Shown piece by piece: positions 264 to 46,550 of a DNA stretch of 64,000 bases. The translations under genes and the position numbers were made by a program. The notes beneath the pieces were generated by a model. That model did no database searches and was not told the origin of the DNA. It saw nothing but the letters and a program-made list of their open reading frames with translations. Origin of the DNA: Podarcis muralis (taxonomy: Eukaryota); NCBI RefSeq assembly GCF_964188315.1, contig NC_135667.1:22010001-22074000 (forward strand). The letters are read 5' to 3'. Each line of letters starts with the position of its first letter. Position 1 is the stretch's first letter.

Positions 264-267
<4 letters not shown>

Positions 268-10709: not shown

Positions 10710-11611
10710 TTAGGTCTTATTTCTTATTAGATGTTCCCTGTTATTTAGTTCAGGCCGCAACACAATAATATAGCATTTGGGGGCAAAGATGAATCCCAGG
10801 AGACCAGCACCAGAGGCTAAGATAGAAAAGATCTCCACTGCAACCATGTATTTCCCCCTGGTACTGAGGTAGGAGGGAATAAAGGACAGCCAAACACTGC
10901 AAAAGAGCAACATGCTGAAAGTGATGAACTTGGCTTCATTGAAACTGTCAGGTAACTTCCGGGCAAGGAAAGCCACAGTGAAGCTGACAAGAGCCAGGAA
11001 GCCCATGTAGCCCAGGACACAGTAAAACATAGTCACGGATCCCTCATTGCATTCCAGTACAATTTCTTGAAGCATTGAGTTCATGTCAACATCTGGGAAT
11101 GGGGGTGAGGATGCTAACCACACAGTACAGATGCCTCCTTGAATAAAAGAACAGGAAACCACAATGGCAATAGACAGTCTCTTCCCCACCCACTTCCTCA
11201 TCTTGGATCCTGGCTTGGTGGCCATAAAAGCTAAAACCACTGTCATGGTTTTTGCCAACACGCAAGAAACAGCCACTGAAAAGATGGTGCCAAAAGCAGT
11301 TTGTCGGAAGAGGCATGTCACCTTCTCAGGCTTTCCCATGAATAGCAATGCACAAAGGAAGCAGAAGAGAAGGGCAATGAGGAGAGTGTAGGTGAGGTCC
11401 CGATTGTTGGCTTTGACAATGGGTGTGTGGTGGTGCTTCAAAAATGTTCCCAGAACCAAAGCTGTGATGAAGGAAAAAGCAAAAGCACTGCAGGCTAAAC
11501 TGATGCCCAGAGGTTCGTCATAGGATAAAAAGGTTATTTCCTTGGGAATACACATATCCTGATTACTATTTGGATATTTTTCTTCTGAGCATATATTACA
11601 CTCATTCATGT
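10710..11611 (-). CDS. Vmn2r: V2R gene 2 exon 6 (end of CRD plus 7TM, Y type)
   Basis: ORF 10710..11609 with [34 protein letters not shown] class C 7TM motifs; ttttcag acceptor. Confidence 0.95.
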
Positions 11612-12397
11612 CTGAAAAAGAAAATATTTGGTATTAATCAGGGAGAGTGAACACATATTCTGTAGAAATTATGTTTATCTGAACTATGTTTTAATTGTTA
11701 TTATTTAATATGCAATGGTTTTTGTATTCTAATGAACAACATATTAAATTTGATTATGAATTTTTCCTGTCTTGTCTGGTGAAAGCCCTATTAAGTAGTG
11801 TGTGTGGAGTTTTAACCGACATCTGCGAGGAACATTGTGTGTTAGAATACTATAATCTGTAAGCAAAATAAGGCTAGGAGTTATGGCTATTTTGTGTAGT
11901 GTTGGAAGGATTTTTTAAACCTTGGTGTAACAGATAAAAACCTCACATTTTAACTTCTAAACTAGATAGATATTATTTTCATTTTATTAAAATGCAAAGC
12001 ATAGTAATTTTGAAAGTCCTCTCCTGGAACAAAAAGTTGCAATCCCTGTTAATAGATAAAAAAATAGAGCAAAAACTCTAAACTTTATTTTTTTTAAATT
12101 TCCAATTATTTTTGTCTGTGCTGTTCTATTTAGGTTGGTCATGTATTCTCTTAATTTTTCATTTATTCCTTCTATCTCTGTAAATTTCCATTTTTATCAC
12201 GTAAATGTATCTGTATCATTGTGTGTTGTGTTAGATGAATAGATTGTGGGATCCAACTATCACAAAGAATCGGTCTCCTGCTTTTGCAACAATTGAAGGA
12301 TCTAAACACTCTTCAAAGACTGGACCAAGTTAAGTTCATTCCTAAAACTTTTTCTTTCAGGCTTATTGCCATTGATGATAAGTCAGAAAATCATTTT

Positions 12398-12465
<68 letters not shown>

Positions 12466-15400
12466 TTTGTATGTTTGTTTGAAGCTTGATCATACATTTG
12501 GAAGTTATCTTCTCTGATACTGTTACTAGTACTGCCCATTATCTAGCTTCTGTACAAAAGCCACTGTACTTAATACCCAACATATTTCCCTGACAGGGAC
12601 TCTGAGGCAAATAATCACAGACACAAACCAGTTTCTTCTTCAGCAACTACCTACAGGCTTAATAAACATTTCAATCACATGCTAAACCTGGTATATAGTC
12701 GTTAATTCGTAGGCACATTCCTATGAATTCCAGCTAAAGCTATTCACTTTTAAACTGTACAGTTTGTGCAGAATACACACCTTCCTGAGCCGAAATCTTC
12801 CCTTCTGGACATGGGATGCAATCATAACAGCAAAATGGCTCCCCATCTTTCACTCTTTTCCTAGTTCCGGGATGGCACCGCTCAGTGCATAAGGAAAGAG
12901 GCTGAGACTAATCCATACATGAGAACCCAGAATAGTAATTTTGAGAATTTTGAGATTAGAATATTTAAGGCAACTTTTAGGTGTTCTTAAGTGATGCTTT
13001 CTTTCAGGAATGTATCACTAATTTTCCTAATCAACATGATAATTATAGTACAACAGACTGTTAAGAAACCATCTTTTGGAAAGGATGGAGTTGGTTAATG
13101 GCGTAGATTCTGATTTCATGCATACACAAAACAGACAAGATATAGAGTTTTGCTTTTTATACTTCCCCCAAAAAACTTCTCAATTAATATAGATAGAAAT
13201 ATCTTTGCCATCCGTCCATCCATCCATCCATCCATTGTAGTTTTTCTGTTTTCTAAAAAGTTACAAACCAGACCATTGAGACTTACCTGGTTAAAATGGT
13301 TGGGCCAAGTTATGGCATCCCCATTGATGGTCAACTGTTGGTTGGGATCAACATTCCCAACCTTCACTCTATGAAATGATTGGTTTGAGGAAACAATCCA
13401 GTTGATCACATCAAATCCAGCCACTAACTCTCCATTCTCATCAAAGGAAATCTTGTCCCCACCACTGTTGTTAAAAGAGACACGTCTGAGAAAATTATGT
13501 AGCTGGTTTGAAGAGAAAAAGGGAAGAGTTCAGAAAAGGCTGCAGTTGGATAGTTGATAGTAAAGACATACCTTGTTTATGGTTTCTGAGTGAGAAAGTA
13601 TTCATGATACTTTGTAAAATACTCTTTGTAATTCCGAAAAGGAGGAAGAAATTCTAATGAATTGACTTTAAAGCACGTTAGGTTCTGAAGGTTTGGTTTC
13701 TATATTTTTCAGAGTGTTGAAACACGGTTAATGTTTCAATAGTCAATAAGGTTAACACCATTTTAGTTTGGGTTGACACAATCAGAGCCGACTTCTGACA
13801 CCAGAATATATTGATTAAAAAAATAAATAAAAATGTGATTCAACTGCCTAACTCATTAATGTATATGCACCCACTTGGAAGGTAGCATTAAAAATACAAC
13901 AAAAAAATATAAGATGAACATATAGAAACCTATACCAAGGGTAGTAAATTTTAATAAAGGTGGTAATGAAGAGGGCAGGGAGAGTTCTTATAAATTGACT
14001 TTAAAGCATGTTTCTGAAGTTTCTGAAACTTCTGTTTCTATGTATTATTATTTTTAAATAAAATATGTGACTTCAAGGGGCATACATATTCATGTAGATC
14101 TACTCCCAGAAGGCCTGGTTCAGGCTCATTAAGAAGAAGAGTTTGGATTTGATATCCTGCTTCATCACTATCCGAAGGAGTCTCATAACAAACACTCTGT
14201 GAGGTGAGTGGGACTGAGAGACTTCAAAGAAGTGTGACAAGCCCAAGGTCATCTAGCAGCTGCATGTGGAGGAGCGGAGACGCGAACATGGTTCACCAGA
14301 TTACGACTACACCAAACTGGCTCTTAATTTAACAGAATGAATTAGATGCACCAAATTCATAACAGAATTTCTACCTATTACAAAATATGGAGCAGGACTT
14401 TCACTAAAACTGCCATTAGCCCCAGTCAATATAGAAAAAGTTCTGGGATGATGGGAATTGTAGTCAAACAACATCTGGAGGGCATGACTGGTTAGGTGGA
14501 CTTGGCGAGTTGAGAAAATCAAACAGTAATTTGGAAACCATCCAGAAATTTAAGGGAGGAAAGGAAGAAGAGTTATTAAAGCGATATATGTTATATACCT
14601 TAAGATGGGAAGGAATTGGGGACACATTAAGGACACAAATTAAGGACTATTGTAGTACACTTATGGTGCTCTGCCTCTTGATAATGTTGAGCATGTTACC
14701 TGCCACAATTGTTGATTCGGGTACTTCCATCCACCTCTTGTTTCCATTACTTGATATTTGAATCTAGTTGAAGACATGTAATGCAAAGCATGGGCTACAG
14801 AGCAGACAGCATTGTAGATGCTGTAGCTGTGGCCATTCATGCTCATCTCAAAGAATGGAGCAGGAAGGCTCTCTAGTTTCTCCTCCCCAGTACAAATATT
14901 CCCCATCACATCTTCCACATTTGGATCTGCAAATACACAGTCAAAGGCCTGTTGCCAGAAGTCTCTGATGAAACCATCTCCTTTTGTGCTTAAAGGATTT
15001 TTGCTCTCAACAAATGCTTTGAATGCTGGTAGATCATTGGAATGGATAGTGAAGGACAGGACACCATGGAATATTTCTGTGTCCAAATTCTTTTGATAGA
15101 GCTGTGAAGTGAGCTCCATTGCAGCTGTTGTTATCCACACTATACCTTTTGGTAGACTTGGTGGATGTTCTGCAAAATACGGAATCCATCTCAAAATCAT
15201 CATTGAATAAGAGTCACCATAAAACACAACCACACTGGCTGTACTATTCAGAAGTTCATTATGTATTTTTAATCCATATTCAAGAATTTCATCAAATTCA
15301 GTGGCAGACCTAAACATAGGGATTCTTTTTATAAAGTCAAAGCAGATACCCCTCTGGGAAAATTTTGGTAAAGCAGTTTGCAAAATCATTTCACCATTTT

Positions 15401-18400
15401 CATTATCCATTACTAGTACTCCAATCCATATCCATTTGAAATAAAGAAGCAAAGAGATAATTCCTGTGTATTGAAGTGCTTGATGAGGAACCATCTGGTA
15501 GAAAGAAATTCCTGGGTTTCCATCTGTTTTCAATGGAGCAGAGCCATATATGAGCTAAAGGAATTTTAGGGGAGAGAAAGAAAAGTTGTAAAAATAGAAT
15601 GCATATTGCATATTAAAGTTTTCAATAGCGTTCATGGAAATAGGAAACCACTGCTTTCACCTTTGCTTATGGAAGCCAACTATAGAATCTCATACAATTG
15701 AAGAATGCTAAAGTAGGGAATCAAGAATTAAAAGGAACAACTGGCAAGTTTGGCCTTGGAGATCAAAATGAAGCAGGGCAAAGGCTAATCTAGTTCTGTC
15801 AAGAGAACAAGCTGGTCATCACAAACACTCCTTTCCAACAACAAAAGAGATGACTCTACACATGGACATCACCAGATGGGCAGCATCAAAATCACATTGA
15901 TTATATTCTCTGCAGCCAAAGATGGAGAAGCTCTATACAGTCAGCAAAAACAAGACCTGGAGCTGACTGTGGCTCAGATCATCAGCTTCTTATAGCAAAA
16001 TTCAAACTTAAACTGAAGAAAGTAGGAAAAACCACTGGGCCGGTAAAATACAATCTAAATCAAATCCCTTATGAATACACAGTGGGAGTGAGGAACAGGT
16101 TTAAGGATTTAGATTTGATGGACAGAGTGCCTGAAGAACTATGGATGGAGGCTCGCAACATTATACAGGAGGCAACAACAAAAGCCATCCCAATGAAAAG
16201 GAAATGCAAGAAAGCAAAGTGGCTGTCCAATGAGGCCTTACAAATAGCGGGGGAGAGAAGACAAGCAAAATGCAAGAGAAATAGAGAAAGATACAGGAAA
16301 TTGAATGCAGATTTCCAAAAAATAGAAAGGAGAGACAAGAAGGCATTCTTAAATGAGCAATGCAAAGAAATAGAGGAAAACAACAGAATGGGAAGAACCA
16401 GAGATCTGTTCAAGAAAACTGGAGATATGAAAGGAACATTTCGTTCAAAGATTACCATAATAAAGGACAAAAGTGGCAAGGACCTAACAGAAGCAGAAGA
16501 CATCAAGAAGAAGTGGCAAGAATACACAGAGGAATTATACCAGAAAGAAATGGATGGCTTGTACACACCAGGTAGTGTGGTTGCTGACCTTGAGCCAGGT
16601 ATCCTGCAGTGAAGTCAAATGGGCCTTAGAAAGCACTGCAAATAACAAGGCCAGTGGAAGTGATGGTATTCCAGCTGAACCATTTAAAATTTTAAAAGAT
16701 GATGCTGTTAAGGTGCTACACTCAATATGCCAACAAGTTTGGAAAACTCAGCAGTGGCCAGAGGATTGGAGAAGATCAATCTACATCCCAATGCCAAAGA
16801 ACGGCAGTGCTAAAGAATGCTCCAACTACCGCACAATTGCACTCATTTCATACGCTAGCAAGGTTATGCTTAAAATTCTACAAGGAAGGCTCAAGCAGTA
16901 TGTGGACTGAGAACTCCCAGAAGTGCAAACTGGATTTAGAAAAGGGGAAGAACCAGAGACCAAATTGCAAACATGCGCTGGATTATGGAGAAAGCTAGAG
17001 AGTTCCAGAAAGACATCTACTTCTGCTTCATTGACTATGCAAAAGCCTTTGACTGTGTCAACCACAGCAAACTATGGCAAGTTCTTAAAGAAATGGGAGT
17101 GCCTGATCACCTCATCTGTCTCCTCAGAAATCTCTATGTGGGACAAGAAGCTACAGTTAGAACTGGATATGGAACAACTGATTGGTTCAAAATTGGAAAA
17201 GCAGTACGACAAGGCTGTATTTTGTCTCCCTGCATATTTAACTTATATGCAGAATTCATCATGCGAAAGGCTGGGCTGGATAAATCCCTAGCCAGAATTA
17301 AGATTGTCAGAAGAAATATCAACGACCTCAGATATGCAGATGACACAACCTGGATGGCAGAAAGTGAGGAGAAATTAAAGAACCTTTTATTGAGGGTGAA
17401 AGAGGAGAGCACAAAATATGGTCTGAAGCTCAACATCAAAAAAATGAAGATCATGGCCACTGGGCACATCACCTCCTGGCAAATAGAAGGGGAAGAAATG
17501 GAGGCAGTGAGAGATTTTACTTTCTTGGGCTCCATGATCACTGCAGATGGTGACAGCAGCCACGACGGCTGCTTCTTGGGAGAAAAGCAATTACAAACCA
17601 AGACTGCATCTTAAAAAGCAGAGACATCACCTTGCCAACAAAGGTCCATATAGTAAAAGCTATGGTTTTCCCAGTAGTGATGTATGGAAGTGGGAGCTGG
17701 ACCATCAAGAAGGCTGATCGCCGAAGAATTGATGCTTTTGAATTATGGTGCTGGAGGAGACTCTTGAGAGTCCCATGGACTGCAAGAAGATCAAACCTCT
17801 CCATTCTGAGGGAAATCAGCCCTGAGTGCTCACTGGAAAGACAGATCGTGGAGCTGAGGCTCCAGTACTTTGGCCACCTCATGAGAAGAGAAGACTCCCT
17901 GGAAAAGACTGTGATGTTGGGAAAGATGGAGGGCACAAGGAGAAGGGGACGACAGAGGACGAGATGGTTGAATAGTGTCTTCGAAGCTACCAGCATGAGT
18001 TTGACCAAACTGCGGGAGACAGTGGAAGACAGGAGTGCCTGGCGTGCTCTGGTCCATGGGGTCCCAAAGAGTCAGACACGACTAAACGACTAAACAACAA
18101 CAACATTCCAATGCTCAAGTTAGGGATTCAAGGCTGAAAGAATATACACTGATCAATAGCCATCAAGTGGATTTATGGCTGAGAGGAAAATGCACTGAGG
18201 TTTTCCTGGCTCAAAGTTTGCATCTATAATTGCTAGATTACAGCAACACTCTCAGAGCAAAATTCTTATTGCCCAGTTAGGCACGTTATTTGACCAATGA
18301 CAGCAGCGAAATAAGGAAATATGAAACAAACCCCAACCAAATGCCAATCAGGTTGAGAAAAAAAATCATTTCCACCCAAACCCAAAATAGCACATTTAAA

Positions 18401-19983: not shown

Positions 19984-21493
19984 CCTCGGTACAGAAGTCT
20001 GAAGCCTGGAATATCCAAGAGCAGAGCTGTGAACTCTTGTCTTTTCCCAGTGCCACTCCATATCTCTCAATTGAACTGGATATATTTATGACAACCTTCA
20101 CACTCTTTGCTCTCTGTTATGCTAACAGCCAAGGAAGTTCCCAGGGGTTTGGCTGAACATCATAATTAATGACCGTCCTTCTGACTAACTAATTGTGTAG
20201 TTAATTATTACATTAACAACAATTCCGAAATGGAGGATGTGGAGTCCTTTAGGAATTAAGAAAAGTTGTTTGTCACATATTTTGGAAAGAAGATTTCCCT
20301 CACTCTTTAGTTAGTTAGGAAGGCATGGTGAAGTTTGGAATGACTCACAGCATGAAGAGGACACTGGATTCAAATCTTTGTGGTAGGGGTTAGCAACAAA
20401 GTAGTCATGGATGCCTTATGCCTGTGTCTCCTTACAATTGCAACATGAGCAGTCTCAATAAATGCTCCCTCATAAATCCACATTAAACAAGAGGATGTTG
20501 ATCAGAATATAATGGGGGGGGGGCAGCTGAGAGGCATTAATCCCCTTAATGCACCCCTTTTATCAGACAGCTATGAGTTTGAATGTCAATTATGAGACGC
20601 TTTGTAAGATGAACCTGTGATCCATCAAGCTATGGGCACTGACTGAGCCCTATATGTATTCTCGTCTGGCTGTCAGCTGTTGTCACTTGCTTAAGGAAGG
20701 ACAATCAGGAGAGAGTCTATCTAAATTCTCTATGGAGGGAGTTCCCAAATCTGTGTGTAGCCACTGAGAAGGCCATTTCCTGCTTCACTACCAAGTGAAC
20801 CTGTGAGGGTGGCAAGAACTAGAAAAGGACTTCCCCCAAAGATCTCGACACCTGGGCTATTGAGGCCATCGACAGTGCACATATGGAGGCAAATAATGTG
20901 AATAAAAGGTGACTCTTTCAAATAAAAATTCTTCAGTGCAAAAACATGGTTCAAAAGATTTACTACACAACTTTACTCTGAAGCAACGGGAAACAAATAA
21001 AGTTACATTCAGATAGTTGAATAATGTCTTATACTTGTCCAAGCATAGCACACTTGGATTCCAAATATATATATATTCAAGTGCTAAAATTCCTTTGTCT
21101 TTCCTCCATTCCAGTCTCCATTAGCCTGAGGCTCTTTTCTTGGAGATAGATAAGCAAATGGACTTGTAACACTAGAGGTTTCATGTGATTCTAAGCTAAA
21201 CACCTTGTGATGCACCCAGATGAGATTTAGCCCCACTTAATCATAAACTGCTAGACTCTTCTCTCAACTCTTCTTTAGCTTCAATAGAAGTTTCCATGCT
21301 ATGCATCACAATCTAAATACCAACACATTACAGATTTATTTTCCATTGCAGTGTACAATTCAACAATTTTATTTAACACAGAAGCTCGCAATATATAAAA
21401 GGAAAGAAGATAACATAGCAGAACAAGCCCATTTTAACCCCTTGTCTGGTGACCACTCTTCATGCATGCATGCATTCTATGCACTCAAATTCT

Positions 21494-22219
21494 TCAGGTC
21501 TTATTTCTTATTAGATGTTCCCTTTCGTTCAACTCAGGCCGCAACACAATAATGTAGCATTTTGGTGCAAAGATGCAACCTAGCAGACCAGCACCAGATG
21601 CTAAGATAGAAAACATCTCCACAGCAACCGTGTATTTTCCCTTGGTACTGAGGTAGGTTGGAACAAAAGATACCCAAACACTGCAAAAGACCAACATGCT
21701 GAAAGTGATGAACTTTGCTTCATTGAAACTGTCAGGTAACTTCCTGGCAAAGAAAGCTACAGTGAAGCTGACAAGAGCCAGGAAGCCCATGTAGCTCAAG
21801 ACAGAGTAAAACATAGTCACGGAGCCCTCATTACATTCCAGTACAATTTCTTTAGTGATTGAGTGCATGGCAACATCTGGAAATGGGGGCAAAGATGCCA
21901 GCCACACAGTACAGATGCCTGCTTGAATAAAGGAACAGGAAACCACAATGGCAATAGCCAGTCTCTTCCCCACCCAGTTCCTCATCCTCGATCCTGGCTT
22001 GGTGGATGTGCTTTTTGCTTTGACAATGGGTGTGTGGTGGTGCTTCAAAAATGTTCCCAGGACCAAAGCTGTGATGAAGGAAAAAAGTAAAAGCAAAGCA
22101 GGCTAAACTGATGCCCAGAGGTTCCTCATAGGACAAAAAGGTTGTTTCCTTGGGAATACACATATCCTGATTATTATTTGAATATTTTTCTTCTGAGCAT
22201 ATATTACACTTGTTCACGT
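21494..22219 (-). pseudogene. Orphan X-type V2R exon 6, disabled
   Basis: Intact acceptor but +1 frameshift in the A-run near 22081 and an internal deletion of about 177 nt net near 22005-22015 (removes NNKDL...VLAFMA); no exons 1-5 of its own. Confidence 0.9.
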
Positions 22220-22286
22220 CTGAAAATGAAAATATGTGGTCTTAATCAGACAAAGTGAACACATATTCTGTAGAAATCATGAATTA

Positions 22287-22876: not shown

Positions 22877-23141
22877 CCTAAGGGGTCCAAAAGGGCTACA
22901 GGAAAGAAAGTAATGTAACCCCCAAGTAAATGGGGAGTTGCCTGAACAATAAATGGAGGGGCAGGATACATATATCCCCCCTCTCTTTTTGGCTGCAAAA
23001 TCTTAATTAAATTCTCCAAATAAAATTTAAATGTTCAGAGAATGTGGGGGGCTATGGGAAAAATTATATAGTTCAACATTTTTTATAAATAAAAAACTAA
23101 CAAGCAAGCAAAATAAAGTACATTGAAGGCACTCAGATTCC

Positions 23142-24828: not shown

Positions 24829-24873
<45 letters not shown>

Positions 24874-35152: not shown

Positions 35153-37100
35153 CTGAAAAAGAAAATACGTGGTCTTAATCAGGGAAAGTGAACACATATT
35201 CTGTAGAAATCATGTCTACCTGAATAATGTTGCGCCCAAGGGCCCCAAGCCCTTTCCCAGTAAATAACTTCAAACAGACACATAATTTTAGTTTTAAAAT
35301 TTTCAGCAAAATTTAGGCCACAACTTTATTGAGTGGTATTGCCTAGGTGGGAAGCGGGTGGCGCTGTGGGTTAAACCACAGAGCCTAGGACTTGCCGATC
35401 AGAAGGTCAGTGGTTCGAATCCCTGTGACGGGGTGAGCTCCCGTTGCTCGGTCCCTGCTCCTGCCAACCTGGCAGCTTGAAAGCACCTCAAAGTGCAAGT
35501 AGATATATAGGTACCGCTCTGGCGGGAAGGTAAACGGTGTTTCGTGAACTGCTCTGGTTCGCCAGAAGTGGCTTAGTCATGCTGGCCACATGACCCGGAA
35601 GCTGTATGCCGGCTCCCTCGGCCAATAAAGCGAGATGAGCGCCGCAACCTCAGAGTTGGTCATGACAGGACCTAATGGTCAGGGGTCTCTTTCCGTTTAC
35701 CTTTATTGCCTAGGCATTGTTCAGGGATTATAACTGAATCCTGCCTCTCTGGTTGGCAGTCTTTAAGGGTAAACACCAAATGAGGGAGCAACATTGGTGA
35801 AGATCGATTGAAGCTCATCCCGGTGTTCCTGTGGTCTTGGCATGGCCCTAGCCCCTTAAGCAGACTTCGGAAGAGATCCAGGACCCCCAGATTCCTTTAC
35901 CAGAATACCCTATTTCTGGAGGTGCAGGTGATGGCCACACCTCCCTTCCCACACATTTCTATAAACCAATGCCTAACCGCCAAACCTTACAAAGTTGTGG
36001 CGATGGCTAAGGGGGTAGGCGAATACCAAGTGGCTAAAGCAAATCTGCCAAATGGAAAAATTCCAACCCATCCCCTGCTCCAAAGCAGGCGACCCAATCC
36101 AAAGCAAGGCCAAAACAGTAGCACCTAAAATAGGTAGGGAGGGTGTTCAGCAGGGTGAAGCAAGTGCCCCACCCCCATTGTGCTGCCACATTTATAGGTT
36201 CCTGGGATCATGCCACTCGCCCCAATTGGCCCAAACAGCCAAGCGCGATCCTGGGGCCCAACAGACAAGGTTTGGGCCACGCCTAGCAACAACACACCCT
36301 GTGGGGGTGGCTTAAGGGTCCCAAGCACAACCAGGATCCTCGATTTAGGAGGATCACATTTTAATGGCTATTTTTTTCCATGTGTAGTGATATTTGTATT
36401 CTAATATACAATGTCATACATTTGAATACAAAAGTTTTCTGTCTTGTCTGGCGAAAGCCCTATTAAGTGGTGTTTGGAGTTTTAAATGACATCTGCGAGG
36501 AACATTGTATGTTACAATAATCTGTAAGCAAAATAAGGCTAGGAGTTATGCCTATTTTGTGTGGTATTGAAAGTGTTCTTTAAACCTTGGTGTCACAGAT
36601 AAAAACCTCACGTTTTAACCACTAGACTAGATAGATATTATTTTCACCTTATTAAAATGCTCAAAATTATTCACATAGCAAAACGCAAAGCATAGTAATT
36701 TTGGAAGCCCTCCTCTACTGGAACAAAAAGTTGCAATCCATTTTAAAGTTAATGGATTAAAAAATAGAGCAAAAACCCTAAACTTTTCTTTTTATGAATT
36801 TCCAATTATTTTTGTCTGTACTGCTCTGTTTAGGTTGGTCATGTATTCTGCTCATTCTTCATTTCTTCCTTCCATCTTTGTAAATTTCCATTTTATCATG
36901 GAAATGTATCTGTAGCATTGTGTGTTGTGTTAGATGAATAGATTGTGGGATCCAACTATCATAAAGAATTGGTCTCCTGCTTCTGCAAAAAATCAAAGGA
37001 TCTAAACACTCTTCAAAGACTGGACCAAGTTAAGTTCATTCCTAAAACTTTTTCTTTCAGGCTTATTGCCACTGATGATAAGTCAGAAAACCATTTTTGA

Positions 37101-37142
<42 letters not shown>

Positions 37143-40100
37143 TGTTTGAAGCTTGATCATACATTTGGAAGTTATCTTCTCTGATAAACTGTTACTAGTA
37201 CTGCCCATTATCTAGCTATTGTACAAAAGCCACTGTACTTAATGCCCCACCTTTTCCCCTGACAGGGACTCTGAGGCAAATAATTACAGACACAAACCAG
37301 TTACTTCTTCAGCAACTACCTACAAGATTAACAAACATTTCAATCACATGCTAAACCTGGTATATAGTCGTTAAATCGTAGGCACATTCCTCTGAATTCC
37401 AGCTAAAGCCATTCACTTTTCAACTGTACAGTTTGTGCAGAATACTCACCCTCCTGAGACGAAATCTTCCCTTCTGGACATGGGATGCAATCATAACAGC
37501 AAAATGGCTCCCCATCTTTCACTCTTTTCCTAGTTCCGGGATGGCACCGCTCGGTACATAAGGAAAGAGGCTGAGACTAATCCATACATAAGAGCCCAGA
37601 ATAGTAATTTTGAGAATTTTGAGATTAGAATATTGAAGCCAACTTTTAGGTATTCTTAAGTTACACTTCCTTTCAGTAAAGTATCACCAATTGTGCTAGC
37701 AAGTGCAATATTTTTTAATCAACATGAGAATTATAGTACAACAGACTGTTAAGAAACCATATTCTGGAAAGGATGGAGCTTGATTAAGGGCATAGATTGT
37801 GATTCCTTGTATATATAAACCAGATTTCGTTTTTATACTTTTTCCAAACAACTTCTCAATTAATATAGACAGGAATATCTTATCCATCCATCCACTGTAA
37901 TTTTTCCATTTTCTAAAAAGTTCCAAACCAGACTCTCAGTATTTTATTGGATTTCCTTATTTATAATTAATCTAATTTTAGACATCAGGGCAGAGTGCTA
38001 GTGCTTACTCAGAACCAGGTGTCTTACTCAAATGGGTGACCATTGAGACTTACCTGGTTAAAATGGCTGGGCCAAGTTATGGAATCCCTATTGATGGTCA
38101 ACTGTTGGTTGGGATCAACATTCCCAACCTTCACTCTTTGAAATGATTGGTTTGAGGAAACAATCCAGTTGATCACATCAAATCCAGCCACTAACTCTCC
38201 ATTCTCATCAAAGGAAATCTTGTCGCCACCGCTGTTGTTAAACAAGACACGTCTGAGAAAAATATGTAGCTGGTTTGAGGGGGTGAAGGGAAGAGTTGAG
38301 AAAAGGCTGCAGTTGGATCATTGATAGTAAAGTCATACCCTGTTTATGGTTTTTGGGTGAGAAGGTATTTGCGTGGACAGGCGGAGTCCCCAGATCCCAA
38401 GCGGTCTCTCCCCCCCCCCCCGTCATGTGGAATAATGACTCAAGACAACGTGCTATGGGATTAAATTGGCCACAACTTTATTAAATTTCAAATGTGGGTA
38501 GACCTTGGCTCAGGCATTGGGCGTTCTCCCTCCCCAGTCACCAGCCGGGGACCTAGGGAGCTTCAGGATTATCCAGTGTGTGTGTGGGGTGGGGATGGGC
38601 CGGCTCTGGAGAACATATGTTCAAGCAGAGATAGCCGCCCCCGTTACGCCACCGCCACAGGGGAGAGCAATGACAACCTTTCGGCGTACAGTCAAAGCCT
38701 CCCTTCAGAAACTCCTTTAATGGGGAACCCTGGTATCGCCGCCGCAAAGAGGAAAATGGACTAAAGGATTCCACCCAAGGCCTGATACCACCAAAGTTGT
38801 GACGTTTTGCAACGGGAAAGGCAAAACCTGCCAATGCAGGGAAATTCCTTTCCGGCCCTTTAACAGTGACCTTAACGTAGCAGCGCCCACATACCTGTGA
38901 AGATAAGTTAACTTGCAAAACCTATGAAGAAAAGTTAACCTGCAAAAGAAGACATTAACTGAGGGTGGGTAGGGTCGGAGAAGCTCTGGAGCCAAGTGAG
39001 GATTCCCAGGTAAGATCCTCCCTCTATTGTGTGGGCAGGTAATCCCTCCCCTCCCTGGCCTGGTCTCCTTGGCAATGCTTCTCCCAGGTGGGATTGGACA
39101 ACTGACTGAGGTAGGAGGAGACCTCCAGGTATCCCACCTGAGGGAAGGCAAAGCCAAGCCTATGCTGATGGGGCTGCTCCAGATCTAGGGCTGCGTGCAT
39201 CCACGCAAAGGGCGCCCCCCGTTTTAAGCGGGGAGCGGTCATTATGATAAAGAAGCTCACTCTTTGTAATTCAGAAAAGGAGCAGCAGATTCTAATAAAT
39301 TGACTTTAAAGCACATTAGGTTCTGAAGCTTCTGTTTCTATATTTTTCAGAGTGTTGAAACACGGTTAATGTTTCAATAGTTAATTAGGCCAACACCATT
39401 TTAGTTTGTGTTGACTCAGTGAGAAAATGACCAACTTCTGACACCAGAAAGTATTTTATTTTATTTTTTTAAAAAAGTGATTCAAGTGCCTAACTCATTA
39501 ATGTATATGCACCCACTCGGAAGGTAGCATTGCAAAATACAACAAAAATATATATAAGATGAACATATAGAAACCTCACTCTTTGTAATTCAGAAAAGGA
39601 GCAGCAGTTTCTAATAAATTGACTTTAAAGCATGTTAGTTTCTGAAACTTCTGTTTCTATTTATTATTATTTTTAAATAAAATATGTGACTTCAAGGGGT
39701 ATACATATTCATGTAGATCTGCTCCCAGAAGGCCTGGTCCAGGCTCAATAATTTAACAGAATGAATTAGATGCACCAAATTCATAACAGAATTTCTACCT
39801 ATCACAAAATAGGGAGCTGGGCTTTCACTAAAACTGCCATTAGCCCCAGTCTGTGTACAAAGTGGTCTGGGGTGATGGGAAATGTAGTCAAACAAAATCT
39901 GGAGGGTGCAACCGGTTGGGTTAACCTGGCTGATTGAGAGAATCAAATAGTAATTTAGAAATCATCCAGTAATTTAGGAAACGGAAAGGAAGAAGTGTTA
40001 TTAAAGCGATATATGTTATATATCTTAGGTTGGGAAGGAATTGGGGACACAGTATTTATGCAAATTAAAGACTATTATAGTACATTTATGGTGCTCTGCC

Positions 40101-43100
40101 TCTTGACAATGTTGAGCATGTTACCTGCCACAATTGTTGATTTTGGTACTTCCATTGACCTCTTCTTTCCATTGCTTGATATTTGAATCTAGTTGAAGAC
40201 ATGTAATGCAAAGCATGGGCTACAGCGCAGACAGCATTGTAGATGCTGTAGCTGTGGCCATTCATGGTCTTCTCAAAGAATGGAGCAGGAAGGCTCTCTA
40301 GTTTCTCCTCCCCAGTACAAATATTCCCCATCACATCTTCCACATTTGGATCTGCAAACACACAGTCAAAGGCCTGTTGCCAGAAGTCTCTGATGAAACC
40401 ATCTCCGTTTGTGCTTAAAGGATTTTTGCTCTCAACAAATGCTTTGAATGCTGGTGTGTCATTGGAATGGATTGTGAAGGACAGGACACCATGGAATATT
40501 TCTGTGTCCCAATTCTTTTGATAGAGCTGTGAAGTGAGCTCCATTGCAGCTGTTGTTATCCACACTATACCTTTTGGTAGACTTGGTGGATGTTCTGCAA
40601 AATACGGAATCCATCTTAAAATCACCATGGAATAAGAGTCACCATAAAACACAACCACACTGGCTGTACTATTCAGAAGTTCATTATGTATTTTTAATCC
40701 ATCTTCAAGAATTTCATCAAATTCAGAGGCGGACATAACCATAGGGATTCTTTTTATAAAGTCAAAACAGACACCTCTCTGGGAAAATTTTGGCAAAACA
40801 GTTTGCAAAAACATTTCACCATTTTCATTATCCATTACTAGTACCCCAATCCATATCCATTTGAAATAAAGAAGCAAAGAGAGAATTCCTGTGTATTGAA
40901 GTGCTTGATGAGGAACCATCTGGTAGAAAGAAATTCCTGAGTTTCCATCTGTTTTCAATGGAGCAGAGCCATATATGAGCTAAAGGGATTTTAGGGGAGA
41001 GAAAGAAAAGATGTAATAATAGAATGCATCTTGCATATTGAAGCTTTCAAAACCATTCATGGAAATTGGAAACCAGTGCTTTCACCTCTGCTGATGGAAG
41101 CCAACTATAGACTCTCATAGAATTGAAGAGTTGGAAGGGACCCCAAGAGTCATGTAGTCCAAGCCCTTGCAAAACAAGAACATCTGCTAAGGCACCTAGG
41201 ACAGATGGCCATCCACCAGAGCATGAATTCTCACAATTCCATCTCCAGGAAGAATGAAATATATCTGTTATAGAGGATTGGGGACCGCACCCCAGCAGAT
41301 ATTTTCTAGTTTGAGGGCAACAGGAAGCAAAAAATTGCAAAAAAAACCAAAACACCAACACCACCCCACACCGCCCCGCTCCAATTTTCAATGATGAATT
41401 GATTTGTCAGTGAATTCCACCCATACATTATATTAGCAACTCTTAGAAATACAACGTCAGGTACTGAATTTGACTATTCCAATGCTCGAGTTAGGCATTC
41501 ATGGCTGGAAGAATATACAATGATCAATAGCCATCAAGTGGATTTATGCACTGAGAGGAAATGCACTGAGGATTTCCTTGTTCAAAGTTTGCATCTATAA
41601 TTGCTTGATTACAGCAACATTCTCAGAGCAAAATTCTTATTGACACATTATTTGACCAATGAGAGCAGCGAAATAATCAGACTGCACAACGGTTATAGGA
41701 TAAAATCAGACCAAATTTTGATTAACATCAGCAGGAAGGGTAATATTTGGCATGCCATTAGTGACAGGATCAGTTCATATTCCACAAGCCCCATGATGAT
41801 GGAACGGATCCGCTGGATTTGGACCAGCCCAAGCCCATCCCATGGGTGTTGGCCAGGGTTCAACCTTGCTGTGGTGCAAGCCAAGCAATCAAGGTCTCAC
41901 TAGGTAACCAGGGTGGAGTTTCCACTCAGGCAGATACACAACCCATGTTTGGGCGTGCTGTGGTCAATCCTGCTCTCAGGCCTCTTATGGGGGTTCCCTA
42001 TACTATGTTGATCCTGCCTGATGCCATTTCCTCCTTCATACAAACAATGTTCTTCTGCCTAACGAAAAAAGGGACACAATTTCACTAAGGAAACATGAAA
42101 CAAACCCCAACCTAATGTGAATTAAGTTGAGAGAATAAAATTCATTTCCAGCCCTGTCAACCAGCACCCCCAAATTTCATTTTAAACTCCTCCTAAAATA
42201 AATACAGTAACACAAAGAAACAGCAGCACTTACTGTACAGCATCTTAAAAACCATATCAGGAACAGGAGCCTAAAACTCGGTTTGCATGAGGGATTCATA
42301 AAAAAGGAAGTCACATTATTTTCAAAGCACATATTAATGTCTTGAAATAATAGAATAGGAAGTGTGGAGGGTCACACAGAGGGAGGGAGGGAAAGAGAAA
42401 GCAGAGTTGACCTACCTGTGGAACCTTATACTTATTCAAGACTGTTGCCACATTGACGGAAATTTGGGCATCCACTCCCCCAATGACTGCTATTAGATCT
42501 TTCTGTTGCTCACATACGTAGTTAGGGATAAATCTCTCCTCTGTGGATAAAAGTAGCATTGTAGCATGATATGTCCTCCTTGCATTGAAATAGCTGTCAT
42601 AGATGTGGAAGCCCAAAGTGAGATTGGGTAAGAGGTGAGGGTTTTCATTGATCTCTTTGACTGTGAAAGCCAAAGCCAGGATGTGCTGGTAATGCTTAGG
42701 GACTATGCTGAAAGAAGTGTGAGATTCTTTTTCAGAAGGATATTCCATACTTAGTTTAGTTATTATCACTGTGTTCTGTGTCTCCTTTATTAACAATCAA
42801 TTATTACAGTATTTATATATAAGGTGAGAATATTTATAAGGTGGCCTACATAAATATAAAAGATTAACTATGTCACAAGTCACATTTACTACAACAGCAA
42901 CAATAGCAACTATTTATTATTTATATCCCACCCATCTGGCTGGGTTTCCCCAGCCACTCTGGGCGGCTTCTAACAGAATATTAAAAGCGCAATAAAACAT
43001 CAACCCTTATAAACTTCCCTAAATAGGGCTGCCTTCGGATGTCATCTAAAAGTCAGATAGTTGTTTATTTCTTTGACATCTGGAGGGAAGGCGTTCCACA

Positions 43101-44187
43101 GGGCAAACGCCACTACCGACAAGGCCCTCTGCCTGGTTCCCCGTAATCTCATTTCTCGTAGGGAGGGAACCTCCAGAAGGCCCTCGGAGCTGGACCTCAT
43201 TGTCCTGGCTGAATGATGGGGGTGGTATACTGACTTCAGGTATACTGACTCGAGGCGCTCCAGAAACTCTCCATTCTGATTTAAGTAAGTTTTTAGATTT
43301 TAATAATTTATTTCATTATAAAGCTTATTTGAAAATAAAGTTAAAATATAACAAAACAGATGGGATGGTGTTTATTATTTTAAACTGTCATGGTGAAGAT
43401 GGAGCAGATTGGGGAGGCAATCCTATGGCAAGATCCCCCAGGATGAGCATTTTAGGATGCACAGGATCTCAGGCTCAATTACGCTCAGTTGGCCTTAAAT
43501 CCCCAATCCCAGTTCAGCTGAGCATATATCAGCATAATTTGGTCATCTCTACCAAGCTGACTGTGATGAAACTGGTTGAGCCAAGCTGGTCTAAGACTGG
43601 AAAAGGGAGCATTCCAGGAGCAAGGCAGAGGTGGAATCAGAGAGCGGAGACTTTGCTAGATCCTAAGCATGTCCAGCTTGGTCGTGTGACCTGGCAACCT
43701 GGCATAGTACATATTTTAAAGGCTTGTTTTCCCTCAGTCAGGTGTAGAAGCAGCGGCCTTTCTACTGAACAAGTTTAGATGTAGTGCAACTTTATGCTGC
43801 ATTAATTTATAGCATCTTACTTTACACTAGCTTTTGGTGAATAGGATTTCTCCCTAAGTTTTGTATTCAGTGGCTGCAGCTCTTGCACAAATTATCCCAG
43901 TGGAATTTTTTTATTATATAAAACAAATCAATATTTGGAAAGAAAAGCAAATAATCATTCAGGCTTTACACAAATGGTTCTGTCAATGTTGGCAGGGGTT
44001 CTTCCCTGAAGGCTGGTTCACTGACGACGACACCAGCATGATAAGCAATTCCACCAATTATGAAGTCTCCTTGTTGATGATATTTGTGAAGTGGAGGCTG
44101 TGGGTAATAAATATTGCACTGAACAGCGTGAGTCTGGCATCCCATTGGAGGAAGCAGAGCCAGCAGCAAAATGACTACAACCACCAT
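34251..44187 (-). CDS. Vmn2r: V2R gene 4, complete, 869 aa, X-type 7TM exon
   Basis: Exons 44187-43970, 42707-42416, 40979-40125, 38269-38054, 37576-37450, 35152-34251, in frame. Confidence 0.93.
35228..36358 (-). mobile_element. Solo-LTR-like element A, gene 4 intron 5 (with SINE inside)
   Basis: Same element and site as 46626-47365. Confidence 0.6.
35348..35703 (+). mobile_element. Sauria SINE inserted in solo LTR of gene 4 intron 5
   Basis: A and B boxes, ACCTTT tail, 11-bp TSD tattgcctagg. Confidence 0.92.
37101..37144. repeat. (CT)n(GT)n microsatellite
   Basis: Direct. Confidence 0.97.
37450..37576 (-). CDS. Vmn2r: V2R gene 4 exon 5
   Basis: 127 nt cysteine-rich exon. Confidence 0.92.
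38054..38269 (-). CDS. Vmn2r: V2R gene 4 exon 4
   Basis: 216 nt, [15 protein letters not shown]...WPSHFNQ. Confidence 0.92.
38370..39241 (-). mobile_element. Solo-LTR-like element B, gene 4 intron 3
   Basis: 872-bp GC-rich insert absent from genes 1-3 and 5; TG...CA ends; minus-strand AATAAAGTTGTGGCC about 100 nt from its 3' end; no clear TSD. Confidence 0.6.
40125..40979 (-). CDS. Vmn2r: V2R gene 4 exon 3
   Basis: 855 nt, open. Confidence 0.93.
41677..42085. other. Unclassified 409-bp insertion in intron 2 (second copy 53568-53975)
   Basis: Present in genes 4 and 5, absent at the same site in genes 1-3 (gcagcgaaataaggaaa). Confidence 0.7.
42416..42707 (-). CDS. Vmn2r: V2R gene 4 exon 2
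   Basis: 292 nt. Confidence 0.92.
42891..43263 (-). mobile_element. 3' fragment of another L2/CR1-group LINE, gene 4 intron 1
   Basis: Insert absent from the other genes; 3' UTR ending gggtgggatataaataataaat plus (TTG)-like tail. Confidence 0.7.
43970..44187 (-). CDS. Vmn2r: V2R gene 4 exon 1
   Basis: [20 protein letters not shown]...; 218 nt; donor gtaaag. Confidence 0.88.
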
Positions 44188-45648
44188 CGTCGGTACAGAA
44201 GTCTGAAGGCTGGAGTCTGAAGGCTGATCTGCACTGGATATATTTATGACAACCTTCACACTCTTTGCTCTCTGTTCTGCTAACAGCCAAAGAAGTTCCA
44301 CAGGGATTTGGTTGAACATAATAACAATTGGCAGTCCTTCTGACTAGCTAATTGTGTAGTTAATTATTACATTAACAACAATTCCTAAATGAAGGATGTG
44401 GAGTCCTTTAGGAATTAAGAAAAGTTGTTTGTCACGTATTCTGGAGAGAAAATTTCCCTCACACTTTAGTTAGATAGGAAGGCATGGTAAAGTTTGGAAT
44501 GACCCACAGCAAGAAGAGAACACTGGATTCAAATCTTTGTGGTAGGGGTTAGCAACAAGGTAGTCATGGATGCATTATGCCTGTGTCTGCTTCCTATTGC
44601 ATCATGACCGGTCTCAATAAATGCTCCCTCATAAATCCACATTAAAAAAGAGGATGTTGGTCAGGATATTGGGGGGGGGCACTTGAGAAGCATTAACTCC
44701 CTCAAAGCACCCCTTTTACCAGAGAGTTATGAGTTTGAATGCCAGCTATGAGACACTTTGTACGATGGACCTGTGATCCATCAAGCTATAGGCACTGACA
44801 GACCCCTATATGTATTCTCGTCTGGCTGCCTGCTGTCACCTGCTGTCACCTGTTGTCACTTGCTGAAGGGAGGAAAACCGGGAAATTCTCTATGGAGGGA
44901 GTTCCCAAATCTGTGTGTAGCCACTGAGTAGGCCCTCTCCTGCTTCGCTACCAAGTGAACCTGTAAGAATGGCAAGAACAAGAAAAGGACTTCCCCCAAA
45001 GATCTCAGAACCCGGGCTATTGATGCCATTAACAGTGCACATATGGGGGCAAATCATATGAATAAAAACTGACTCTTCGAAATAAAAATTCTTCAGTGCA
45101 AAAATATGGTTCAAAAGTTTTACTGCAGAATTTCATTCCAAAACAACTTGAAAAAAAGTTACTTTCAGATACCTGCATAATAACCTACACTTGTCCAAGC
45201 ATAGCTCACTTTACTTGGATTCCAATATACATATCTTCGAGTGCTAAAATTCCAAGCTTTGTCCTTCCTCCATTCCAGTCTCCATTAGGCTGAGGCTCTT
45301 TACTTGGAGAGAGATAAGCAAATAGACTTGTAAAACTAGAGCTTTCATCTGATTTTAAGCTAAACACCTTGTAACAGACAAGTTGAGATACAGCCCCACT
45401 TAATCTAAAACTGCTAAACTCTTCTCTCAGCTTTTTCTTAGCTTCAATAGAAGCGACCATGCCATGCTTCACAATCTAAATACAGACACATTACAGATTT
45501 ATTTTCCATTGCAGTGTACAATTAAACAATTTTATTTAACACAGGAGCTCACAATATGATAAAGGAAAGAAGATAACATAGCAGAACAAGCCAATTTTAA
45601 CCCCTTGTCTTGTGAACCCTATGTATGCATTCTATGCACTCAAATTCT

Positions 45649-46550
45649 TCAGGTCTTAGTTCTTGTTAGATGTTCCCTTTCATTCAACTCAGGCCGCAAC
45701 ACAATAACGTAGCATTTTGGTGCAAAGATGCAACCCAGCAGGCCAGCACCGGATGCTAAGATAGAAAAGATCTCCACAGCAACCATGTATTTTCCCTTGG
45801 TACTAATGTAGGTTGGAACAAAAGATACCCAAACACTGCAAAAGACCAACATGCTGAAAGTGATGAACTTTGCTTCATTGAAACTGTCAGGTAACTTCCT
45901 GGCAAAGAAAGCTACAGTGAAGCTGACAAGAGCCAGGAAGCCCATGTAGCTTAACACAGAGTAAAACATAGTTACGGAGCCCTCATTACATTCCAGTACA
46001 ATTTCTTTAGTGACTGAGTGCAAGTCGACATCTGGAAATGGTGGTGAAAATGCCATCCACACAGTACAGATGCCTGCTTGAATAAAGGAACAGGAAACCA
46101 CAATGGCAATAGCCAGTCTCTTCCCCACCCACTTCCTCATCCTGGATCCTGGCTTGGTGGCCATGAAAGCCAAAACCACTGTCATGGTTTTTGCCAGCAC
46201 ACAAGAAACAGCCACTGAGAAAATAATACCAAAAGCTGTCTGTCGGAGGAGGCACGCCACAATTTCAGGTTGTCCAATGAATAGCAATGCAGACAGGAAG
46301 CAGAGGAGGAGAGAAATTAGCAGCATATAAGTGAGGTCTTTGTTGTTTGCTTTGACAATGGGTGTGTGTTGGTGCTTCAAAAATGTTCCCAGGACCAAAG
46401 CTGTGATGAAGGAAAAAGTAAAAGCAAAGCAGGCTAAACTGATGCCCAGAGGTTCAACATAGGACAAAAAGGTTGTTTCCTTGGGTATACACGTATCCTG
46501 ATTATTATTTGGATATTTTTCTTCTGAGCATATATTACACTCGTTCATGT
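45649..46550 (-). CDS. Vmn2r: V2R gene 5 exon 6 (7TM, X type)
   Basis: ORF 45649..46548. Confidence 0.95.

What the first reader, a model, noticed from the sequence alone, without database searches (positions are those of the whole stretch)
10710..46550. Domain-swapped V2Rs: near-identical ectodomains joined to two different 7TM exons
Seen: exon 6 of genes 2/3 (Y) differs from exon 6 of gene 4 (X) at about 38 of 299 aa by hand count, while exon 3 of gene 2 vs gene 4 differs at only about 20 of 285 aa. Intron 5 similarity to gene 4 steps from visibly gapped and divergent (11700-12220) to near-identical (from about 12225 up to exon 5). The start of the window shows gene 1 has the same Y-type intron. 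Established: in V2Rs the 7TM is normally more conserved than the Venus flytrap domain, so the usual pattern is inverted. Inference: genes 1-3 descend from a chimera made by crossover in intron 5, which put this ligand-binding domain on the signalling domain of another V2R subfamily, and it was then amplified three times.
Basis: partly seen in the sequence, partly recalled or inferred. Interest (0 to 1): 0.75.

Follow-up and report, generated by a model that had tools for sequence, protein, structure and literature searches.

The report
Domain-swapped wall-lizard V2R pheromone receptors
Three neighbouring pheromone-receptor (V2R) genes of the common wall lizard really are mosaics: a young ligand-binding half sits on a much older membrane-spanning last exon. 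They arose by ordinary recombination inside a tandem gene array, and leftover exon fragments show how the copies were made.

Summary
The window holds six tandem V2R genes of Podarcis muralis on the minus strand.

- **Exon counts.** Exon 6 of A/B (Y) differs from exon 6 of C/D/E (X) at 38-44 of 299 residues. Exon 3 of A and C differs at 19 of 269.
- **Identity step.** A real alignment of intron 5 shows a sharp step at about 12202 (support 12178-12224).
- **Trees.** DNA trees of exon 3 and exon 6 are significantly incongruent.

- **Origin of Y.** Y is not from another subfamily. It is the native last exon of the array's terminal gene. Exon, 3' flank, a further exon relic and the next gene are collinear with Zootoca vivipara.
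- **Age.** The mosaic and its junctions are also in P. raffonei, so they predate that species split.
- **Amplification.** An out-of-register tandem duplication ran from gene C's intron 5 to 253 bp past the Y exon.

Three things stay open: crossover versus gene conversion, which partner is the chimera, and transcription.

Earlier notes of this scan record similar V2R exon-6 swaps and spare last exons elsewhere in this genome. This is a well-documented new member of a known kind.

The parts
1..10170 (-). Exon 5 is at 536-661 and exon 3 at 5653-6507. Its Y-type exon 6 lies just before the window start.
   Evidence: tblastn of NCBI model XP_077774274 (P0217). Its 7TM is 98-99% identical to Y. Intron 5 carries the Y-type indels.
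10171..10444 (-). About 275 bp of gene C-type intron 5 ('Dn') lying behind gene A. Its low end (10169/10170) abuts g0's 5' flank. This is the junction of the P. muralis-only duplication that made gene A.
10445..10709 (-). Native 3' flank of the Y exon behind gene A: 13 bp plus about 253 bp, cut off at the Dn junction (10444/10445).
   Evidence: Found only behind Y exons in the window. Homologous to the flank of the Zootoca terminal gene.
10710..11611 (-). Gene A exon 6, Y type (7TM), with an intact acceptor (the exon begins two bases upstream of the ORF's ATG).
   Evidence: It is 100% identical to the C-terminus of XP_077774275.
11612..12202 (-). Y-lineage part of intron 5 (U2y) in gene A.
12178..12224 (-). 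Support interval of the exchange boundary in intron 5 (best point 12202).
   Evidence: likelihood-ratio statistic 43; 0 of 2000 permutations reached it
12203..12781 (-). Upstream part of intron 5 (U1), shared with C and D. It holds a (GA)n(CA)n microsatellite at 12400-12465.
12782..12907 (-). Gene A exon 5 (cysteine-rich NCD3G region).
14697..15554 (-). Gene A exon 3 (Venus-flytrap / ANF_receptor).
21481..22222 (-). Relic R: an orphan X-type exon 6 behind gene B. It has a 177-bp in-frame deletion at 22010/22011.
   Evidence: Pfam 7tm_3 positions 103-251. It is 4-6% from C, D and E and 17% from Y. The P. raffonei copy is undeleted and has one stop.
22223..22876 (-). Acceptor region plus Dn: a copy of the 3' part of gene C-type intron 5, attached to relic R.
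22877..23141 (-). Y 3' flank behind gene B. The sharp junction with Dn is at 22876/22877.
   Evidence: The same junction occurs once in P. raffonei. Its two halves match the terminal gene's native flank and gene C's intron 5.
23142..24043 (-). Gene B exon 6, Y type.
27146..28003 (-). Gene B exon 3.
34251..35152 (-). Gene C exon 6, X type.
   Evidence: It is 100% identical to the C-terminus of XP_077774277.
35232..36358 (-). J+Dn: an insertion in intron 5, about 73-80 bp upstream of exon 6. It is present in C, D and relic R and absent from A, B and E. Gene C's copy carries a further 357-bp insert.
40086..40958 (-). Gene C exon 3 (coordinates of the open frame that contains it).
45649..46550 (-). 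Gene D exon 6, X type.
57772..58673 (-). Gene E exon 6, X type. It sits on a very different ectodomain (exon-3 dS 0.44-0.52 to the other genes).
58910..59031 (-). 123-bp stub of gene E's own exon 6, just upstream of the acquired X block.

Best explanation
**What the genes are.** Genes g0, A and B are one family of mosaic V2Rs. From the promoter to the middle of intron 5 (down to about 12202 in gene A), they share a recent, Podarcis-specific ancestry with their neighbours C and D. The rest is an older paralogue lineage: the last 590 bp of intron 5, exon 6 (Y) and its 3' flank. That lineage split from the X exon of C, D and E before Podarcis and Zootoca diverged.

**Where Y comes from.** Y is the native last exon of the terminal gene of this array.

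**Most likely history.**
1. A single homologous exchange in intron 5 joined a C/D-type ligand-binding half to the terminal gene's own 7TM exon. This was either an unequal crossover between a C-like gene and the terminal gene downstream of it, or one long conversion tract ending there.
2. Before P. muralis and P. raffonei split, a roughly 13-kb out-of-register tandem duplication ran from inside gene C's intron 5 to 253 bp past the Y stop codon. It produced gene B and dragged along an orphan copy of C's X exon (relic R).
3. In P. muralis a further duplication made gene A, and R lost 177 bp.

**Shown:** the mosaic, the boundary, the junctions, the synteny, and purifying selection on both exon types.

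**Inferred:** the direction of the swap, crossover versus conversion, and that the Y exon is the one actually spliced.
For: **Divergence.** Exon-6 dS between Y and X is 0.35-0.43, against 0.12-0.13 among X copies. dN/dS is 0.16-0.22 throughout. Exon-3 dS is 0.07 for A-C and 0.14 for C-D.

**Boundary.** The change point is at 12202.

**Sites polarised with Zootoca.** Upstream of 12202 there are 45 derived sites shared by A, C and D, against 7 shared by C and D only. Downstream there are 16 against 47 (Fisher p = 4e-11).

**No speed-up of Y.** In exon 6 the derived changes from the common ancestor are about equal: A 38, C 31, D 39.

**Trees.** DNA AU tests reject congruence.

**Orthology of Y.**
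- Y's flank matches only the Zootoca terminal gene.
- In the last 300 bp of exon 6, 18 sites have A = Z657 and C = Z810. None shows the reverse pairing.
- The terminal Y gene of P. raffonei is collinear with the Zootoca terminal gene through flank, relic W and the next gene.

**Age and reality.** P. raffonei has two Y genes with the same ectodomain type and the same flank|Dn junction. The two halves of that junction map to the native flank and to gene C's intron 5. The P. raffonei relic is closest to X_C: 43-47 differences, against 56-62 to D and E.
Against: **Direction of the swap is not determined.** Zootoca's own copies are homogenised upstream and give no orthology signal there. An anti-Lepore-type history, in which C or the C/D ancestor is the chimera, fits the gene order D-C-Y.

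**The upstream region is a patchwork.** It is A~D at the 5' end, A~C in exon 3 and star-like in exons 4-5. More than one exchange therefore occurred.

**Weaker or qualified statistics.**
- Protein-level AU tests were only borderline (p = 0.052 and 0.118).
- In cross-genus comparisons exon-6 dS is about 2.5 times exon-3 dS. The raw five-fold dS contrast therefore overstates the discordance, which is about two-fold after normalising.

**No transcript evidence.** The four runs laid on the region showed no splice joints.

**Gene A's origin.** I could not reconstruct how gene A arose (junction 10169/10170).
Confidence: 0.6

Rival explanations
1. **Reverse direction (anti-Lepore type).** The Y genes keep their native ectodomain and 7TM. 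Gene C, or the C/D ancestor, is the chimera. It would have arisen when a copy of the terminal gene's 5' half was joined in intron 5 to the X-type 3' end of the gene upstream.
For: - The gene order D(X) - C(X) - Y genes is what a duplication-type unequal crossover gives.
- In exon 3, C is sister to the Y genes and D lies outside, even outside the Zootoca pair.
- The D-to-Y-gene distance relative to the cross-genus distance is about 1.2x in exon 3 and about 1.5x in exon 6, so D and the Y genes are nearly concordant.
- X blocks demonstrably invade other genes: gene E keeps a stub of its own exon 6.
Against: - In exons 4-5 and upstream intron 5, D also shares the Podarcis-specific derived sites with A and C (45 against 7). 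D is therefore not simply a native old gene.
- C and D share the J+Dn insertion and all of the X-type distal intron 5.
- On the exon-3 tree (D,(C,Y)), an ancestral X state needs one switch and an ancestral Y state needs two.
Confidence: 0.25
2. **Concerted evolution with an edge.** There was no single founding crossover. Repeated interlocus gene conversion keeps homogenising exons 1-5 among array members in each species. The step at 12202 is only the 3' edge beyond which the terminal gene's sequence has escaped conversion.
For: - The patchwork of A~D, A~C and C~D tracts upstream.
- Exon 3 clusters by species in both Podarcis and Zootoca.
- In Zootoca, homogenisation runs further, to about 300 bp before the stop codon.
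- Gene conversion is documented in fish V2R-like OlfC genes (PMC6588630).
- The J+Dn insertion and indels just downstream would block heteroduplex extension.
Against: - The boundary is identical in g0, A and B and in both P. raffonei copies. It was therefore set once, before amplification, not repeatedly.
- For the last tract, the sequence outcome cannot be told apart from a crossover.
Confidence: 0.3
3. **No exchange at all.** The Y exon is the original exon 6 of A and B and simply evolved faster, through relaxed or positive selection or a local mutation hot spot.
For: - The Y stem branch is long in the exon-6 DNA tree (0.075 against 0.029).
- Of the 24 fixed X/Y residue differences, 12 are Y-specific.
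Against: - dN/dS is the same for Y-X as for X-X, 0.16-0.22.
- Derived changes from the common ancestor in exon 6 are about equal for A, C and D.
- The step lies in non-coding intron 5.
- Y's last 300 bp and its flank are orthologous to a different Zootoca gene than X's.
Confidence: 0.03
4. **Assembly artefact.** Mis-joined tandem repeats in the assembly created the apparent mosaics and the orphan exon.
For: Tandem arrays at 88-97% identity are hard to assemble.
Against: - The same junctions and gene order occur in an independent assembly of another species, P. raffonei GCA_027172205.1.
- Contigs of 18 public runs from 5 studies each hold 63-78% of the sampled words of the Y block.
Confidence: 0.01

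Closest known systems
Chimeric fusion genes made by unequal crossing-over in tandem arrays (Lepore / anti-Lepore globins, red-green opsin hybrids, CYP11B1/B2, CYP21A1P/A2). An example in the library is the beta-globin HBD/HBB fusions (PMC4041002, seen).
   Same: - Adjacent paralogues in direct orientation.
- One homologous breakpoint.
- The 5' and 3' parts have different genealogies.
- The product keeps an open frame.
   Different: - The breakpoint is in an intron that separates two structural modules, so a whole ligand-binding ectodomain is re-paired with a whole 7TM module.
- The mosaic was then amplified.
- It is conserved in two species and under purifying selection.
Interlocus gene conversion and concerted evolution in chemoreceptor arrays (OlfC subfamily 9 in catfish, PMC6588630; raised only as a possibility for squamate V2Rs in PMC3590772).
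   Same: - Paralogues cluster by species in part of the gene.
- Tracts form a patchwork.
   Different: - Here the ligand-binding exons are the homogenised part and the terminal gene's 7TM exon escaped. This is the opposite of the exon-6-restricted homogenisation noted elsewhere in this genome.
- Structural relics show that real duplications occurred, not only conversion.
Orphan or spare last exons behind V2R genes, noted elsewhere in this genome by this scan (s1-181803).
   Same: A still-recognisable second 7TM exon lies just downstream of the functional one.
   Different: Here its origin can be reconstructed. It is a copy of gene C's exon 6 carried by an out-of-register tandem duplication. 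The junction is shared with P. raffonei.

Membership tests
Vomeronasal type-2 receptor (class C GPCR) | Seven-transmembrane domain of the class C type (Pfam 7tm_3) | tested here: met
   Both Y and X exon 6 match 7tm_3 positions 1-251 of 251, with E about 1e-87.
Vomeronasal type-2 receptor (class C GPCR) | N-terminal Venus-flytrap domain (ANF_receptor) and cysteine-rich NCD3G linker | tested here: met
   Exon 3 matches ANF_receptor. The annotated proteins carry PF01094, PF07562 and PF00003. Exon 5 is cysteine-rich.
Vomeronasal type-2 receptor (class C GPCR) | Expression in vomeronasal sensory neurons | tested here: inconclusive
   Four runs were laid on the region. Only short exact contigs of the Y exon turned up, in two runs of uncertain type, and there were no splice joints.
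Chimeric fusion gene by unequal crossover | The 5' and 3' segments have significantly different genealogies | tested here: met
   DNA AU tests give p = 0.018 for exon 3 and p = 0.0003 for exon 6. Polarised site patterns give Fisher p = 4e-11.
Chimeric fusion gene by unequal crossover | A single sharp breakpoint within homologous sequence, shared by all descendants | tested here: met
   The change point is 12202 (12178-12224). The same Y-type indels occur in g0, A and B. Both P. raffonei copies align continuously across it.
Chimeric fusion gene by unequal crossover | The parental lineages are neighbours in the same tandem array | tested here: met
   C and D lie directly upstream. Y is native to the array's terminal position, by synteny with Zootoca.
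Chimeric fusion gene by unequal crossover | Reciprocal exchange with a change in gene number, as opposed to non-reciprocal conversion | not testable with these tools
   Both processes leave the same sequence. It would need the ancestral gene count from more lacertid genomes.
Out-of-register tandem segmental duplication | A novel junction whose two sides match the two ends of the duplicated unit | tested here: met
   The flank half of the junction matches the terminal gene's native flank. The Dn half matches gene C's intron 5 in P. raffonei. The junction itself occurs once there. It is sharp in the alignment, with 2 bp of microhomology.

The most novel reading that the evidence does not exclude
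In lacertid V2R arrays the 7TM exon may behave as an exchangeable cassette. Intron 5 would be a preferred exchange point, perhaps helped by its microsatellite. Re-pairings of ligand-binding and signalling modules would be retained and amplified because they give new receptor properties, such as different co-receptor pairing, trafficking or G-protein coupling. On this reading the many exon-6 discordances in this genome reflect a selected mode of receptor diversification rather than neutral array turnover.
Probability: 0.1. Interest if true: 0.7.

Novelty: new member of a known kind. Interest (0 to 1): 0.42.

Why it matters
**A natural experiment.** The ectodomain and the 7TM module of a class C chemoreceptor were re-paired across a paralogue divergence older than the Podarcis-Zootoca split. 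The products stayed intact, multiplied to two or three copies, and remained under purifying selection in two species.

**A rare view of mechanism.** The relics (an orphan X exon, a truncated flank and a shared junction) give an unusually complete, step-by-step record of how a chemoreceptor array grows through duplications that are out of register with gene boundaries.

**A practical warning.** V2R trees built only from the 7TM region, which is the usual practice (for example PMC3590772), can misplace genes relative to their ligand-binding domains.

**Limits.** The mechanism itself is classical. The scan's own notes suggest that such swaps are common in this genome.

Tried and rejected
1. **Y block as an insertion into an X-type intron 5** (my first model). 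Rejected. Intron 5 of A, B and E simply lacks the J+Dn insertion of C and D. The Dn+X relic behind gene B is explained by a duplication junction.
2. **Word search with the 299-aa exon.** It sees only proteins of 164-523 aa and found no Y-type protein. Aligning the exons behind a natural 520-aa protein widened the length range and recovered the full-length models.
3. **RNA evidence.** The run search found no RNA holder. The reads laid on the region gave no joints.
4. **Direction of the swap from Zootoca.** There is no signal, because the Zootoca paralogues are homogenised upstream.
5. **Relic R as sister of X_C in P. muralis.** Site patterns were indecisive (8:6:2). The intact P. raffonei relic does lean towards X_C.
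6. **Protein-level AU tests.** These were underpowered. The DNA tests were decisive.
7. **Origin of gene A.** NAHR between R and X_C followed by a deletion, and a template-switch copy of B, both fit. This is left open.
8. **Raw exon-3 against exon-6 dS ratio as a clock.** Rejected after cross-genus comparisons showed that exon 6 has about 2.5 times the synonymous divergence of exon 3.
9. **Joined exons.** Exons were analysed one at a time, and the full-length proteins used are database entries.

Full report
**What is in the window.**
The window holds six V2R genes in tandem on the minus strand.
- Five exon-6 open frames of 299 codons and six exon-3 frames recur every 11-12.5 kb.
- Pfam confirms full 7tm_3 domains in exon 6 and ANF_receptor in exon 3.
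- The genome is Podarcis muralis. Exon translations are 99.6-100% identical to NCBI models XP_077774274 to XP_077774278. Earlier scan notes also name the wall lizard.

**Checking the observation.**
- Exon 6 of A and B (Y) differs from exon 6 of C, D and E (X) at 38-44 of 299 residues and 102-114 of 900 bases. X copies differ among themselves at 12-18 residues. A and B differ at 3.
- Exon 3 of A and C differs at 19 of 269 codons.
- The inversion is significant. A-C has 32/807 against 101/897 differences (p = 1e-8). C-D shows the usual pattern of 62/807 against 43/897.
- Aligning exon 5 to exon 6 of all copies gives a change point at gene-A coordinate 12202 (support 12224-12178). There, sites with C = D but A different rise from 2.0% to 10.5%. 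None of 2000 permutations matched this.

**Is the Y exon merely fast-evolving? No.**
- dN/dS is 0.16-0.22 for Y-X and X-X alike. dS is 0.35-0.43 against 0.12-0.13.
- I polarised sites with Zootoca vivipara. Upstream of 12202, A shares 45 derived sites with C and D, against 7 shared by C and D only. Downstream the counts are 16 against 47 (Fisher p = 4e-11).
- Derived changes from the common ancestor in exon 6 are about equal for A (38), C (31) and D (39).
- DNA trees are incongruent. In exon 3, C groups with the Y genes, and a {C, D} clade is rejected (p-AU 0.018). In exon 6, C groups with D and E, and a {Y + X_C + relic} clade is rejected (p-AU 0.0003).
- Protein-level tests pointed the same way but were borderline.
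- One caveat applies. In Podarcis-Zootoca comparisons, exon-6 dS (0.21-0.29) is about 2.5 times exon-3 dS (0.08-0.13). After normalising, A-C is about 0.7x the cross-genus distance in exon 3. Y-X is about 1.5x that distance in exon 6. The discordance is about two-fold, not five-fold.

**Where Y comes from.**
- A word search with the bare exon cannot see full-length proteins and found nothing closer to Y than X-type sequences.
- I aligned the five exon translations behind a natural 520-aa lacertid protein. That widened the length range and recovered the full-length models.
- The only proteins with a Y-type 7TM are the three P. muralis genes, one older P. muralis model and two P. raffonei genes. 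All have the A/B/g0-type ectodomain.
- In a 7TM tree, X, Y and two Zootoca genes form one clade with 99% support. Y is therefore a close paralogue, not another subfamily.
- I fetched the loci. In Zootoca the array ends Z478 - Z810 - Z657 - a truncated exon-6 relic (W) - the next gene.
- Y's 253-bp flank matches only the flank of Z657.
- In the last 300 bp of exon 6, 18 sites pair A with Z657 and C with Z810. None pairs them the other way. The rest of the Zootoca exon is homogenised between its own copies.
- The terminal Y gene of P. raffonei is the orthologue of g0. It is collinear with Z657 through more than 1 kb of flank, relic W and the next gene.
- Y is therefore the native last exon of the array's terminal gene. 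The X/Y split predates the genus split.

- Behind gene B's Y exon, after 253 bp of flank, the sequence switches abruptly at 22876/22877. It continues as the 3' part of a C/D-type intron 5 (Dn) and then an X-type exon 6 at 21481-22222. That exon carries a 177-bp in-frame deletion.
- Introns of C and D carry a 0.75-1.1 kb insertion (J+Dn) 73-80 bp upstream of exon 6. A, B and E lack it.
- P. raffonei has the arrangement C - Y gene - relic (undeleted, one stop) - terminal Y gene with its native flank.
- The junction 32-mer occurs once in P. raffonei. Its flank half also matches the terminal gene's native flank. Its Dn half also matches gene C's intron 5.
- This is the signature of one tandem duplication. 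Its unit ran from inside C's intron 5 to 253 bp beyond the Y stop. It yielded gene B plus an orphan copy of C's exon 6.
- The P. raffonei relic is indeed closest to X_C.
- In exon 3, g0 pairs with the terminal Y gene of P. raffonei. A and B group with its other Y gene. Gene A is therefore a later copy specific to P. muralis. Its junction at 10169/10170 lacks the relic. I could not settle how it arose.

**Mechanism and what remains open.**
- The boundary at 12202 is identical in g0, A, B and both P. raffonei copies, so it was set once, before amplification.
- An unequal crossover and a long conversion tract ending there give the same sequence.
- The direction is also open. Either a C/D-type 5' half was placed on the terminal gene's Y exon (my preference, about 0.55-0.6), or the terminal gene's 5' half was copied upstream onto an X exon.
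- Zootoca gives no help, because its copies are homogenised upstream.
- The region upstream of the boundary is a patchwork: A~D at the 5' end, A~C in exon 3 and star-like in exons 4-5. Exchange among ectodomain exons has therefore been recurrent.
- A (GA)n(CA)n microsatellite lies 200-260 bp upstream of the boundary. A causal role is speculation.
- Gene E is a separate and stronger case. Its ectodomain is far from the others (exon-3 dS 0.44-0.52). It carries an X exon preceded by a 123-bp stub of its own exon 6. A clade of the X-bearing genes is rejected for exon 3 (p = 0.0003).

**Expression.**
- The NCBI models join exon 5 to the Y exon in frame. The acceptor is intact.
- No RNA holder was indexed.
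- In four runs laid on 21400-26000 there were only three short exact contigs of the Y exon, in two runs of uncertain type. There were no splice joints and nothing convincing on the relic.
- Transcription and splice choice therefore remain untested.

**Comparison with what is known.**
- Chimeric genes from unequal crossover in tandem arrays are classical (for example globins, PMC4041002).
- Gene conversion is reported for fish V2R-like OlfC genes (PMC6588630). It is raised only as a possibility for squamate V2Rs (PMC3590772).
- I found no described V2R ectodomain/7TM chimera in the searched library.
- Earlier notes of this scan record similar exon-6 discordances and spare last exons elsewhere in this genome.

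**Verdict.**
This is a real, well-documented new member of a known kind, with a mechanistic trail that is unusually complete.

**Procedural notes.**
- Exons were handled one at a time.

Noticed in passing
window 57772-59031: Gene E carries an X-type exon 6 that is 95-97% identical to those of C and D, although its ectodomain is only about 81% identical. A 123-bp stub of its own exon 6 (58910-59031) sits just upstream of the acquired block. That block starts at 58915 and lacks the J+Dn insertion. The P. raffonei orthologue (P0134) has the same combination.
   Followed up: partly
window 12400-12465 (equivalent sites in B, C, D and g0): A compound (GA)n(CA)n microsatellite lies in intron 5, 200-260 bp upstream of the exchange boundary. 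It is present in all copies and varies in length.
   Followed up: no
window 35232-36358 and 46628-47365: A GC-rich 0.75-1.1 kb insertion (J+Dn) lies 73-80 bp upstream of exon 6, only in genes C and D and in the relic. Its nature was not determined; it may be a transposable element. Gene C's copy has a further 357-bp insert at 35347-35704.
   Followed up: partly
window 3349-5546, 15920-18106, 28968-30862: A roughly 2-kb element with long plus-strand ORFs (for example 4295-5392 and 29311-30372) is shared by an intron of g0, A and B and absent from C and D. It is probably a transposable-element insertion that predates the Y-gene duplications.
   Followed up: no
L001 10001-10846 (P. raffonei): The P. 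raffonei orthologue of gene C is annotated only as a 281-aa 7TM stub (P0007). Its exon 6 begins with V instead of M. The gene may be pseudogenised there.
   Followed up: no
Merged P. raffonei locus (L001-L003) positions 43350-44042; merged Zootoca locus (L004-L005) positions 29784-30441: A third, truncated exon-6 relic (W) is 76-80% identical to X and Y. It lies between the terminal gene and the next V2R gene and is conserved in position in both genera. It is evidence of an older rearrangement of the same kind.
   Followed up: partly
Exon 3 against exon 6, Podarcis-Zootoca comparisons: Synonymous divergence of exon 6 (0.21-0.29) is about 2.5 times that of exon 3 (0.08-0.13) between the same gene pairs. 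I have no explanation. The cause may be different conversion histories or a difference in mutation rate.
   Followed up: no
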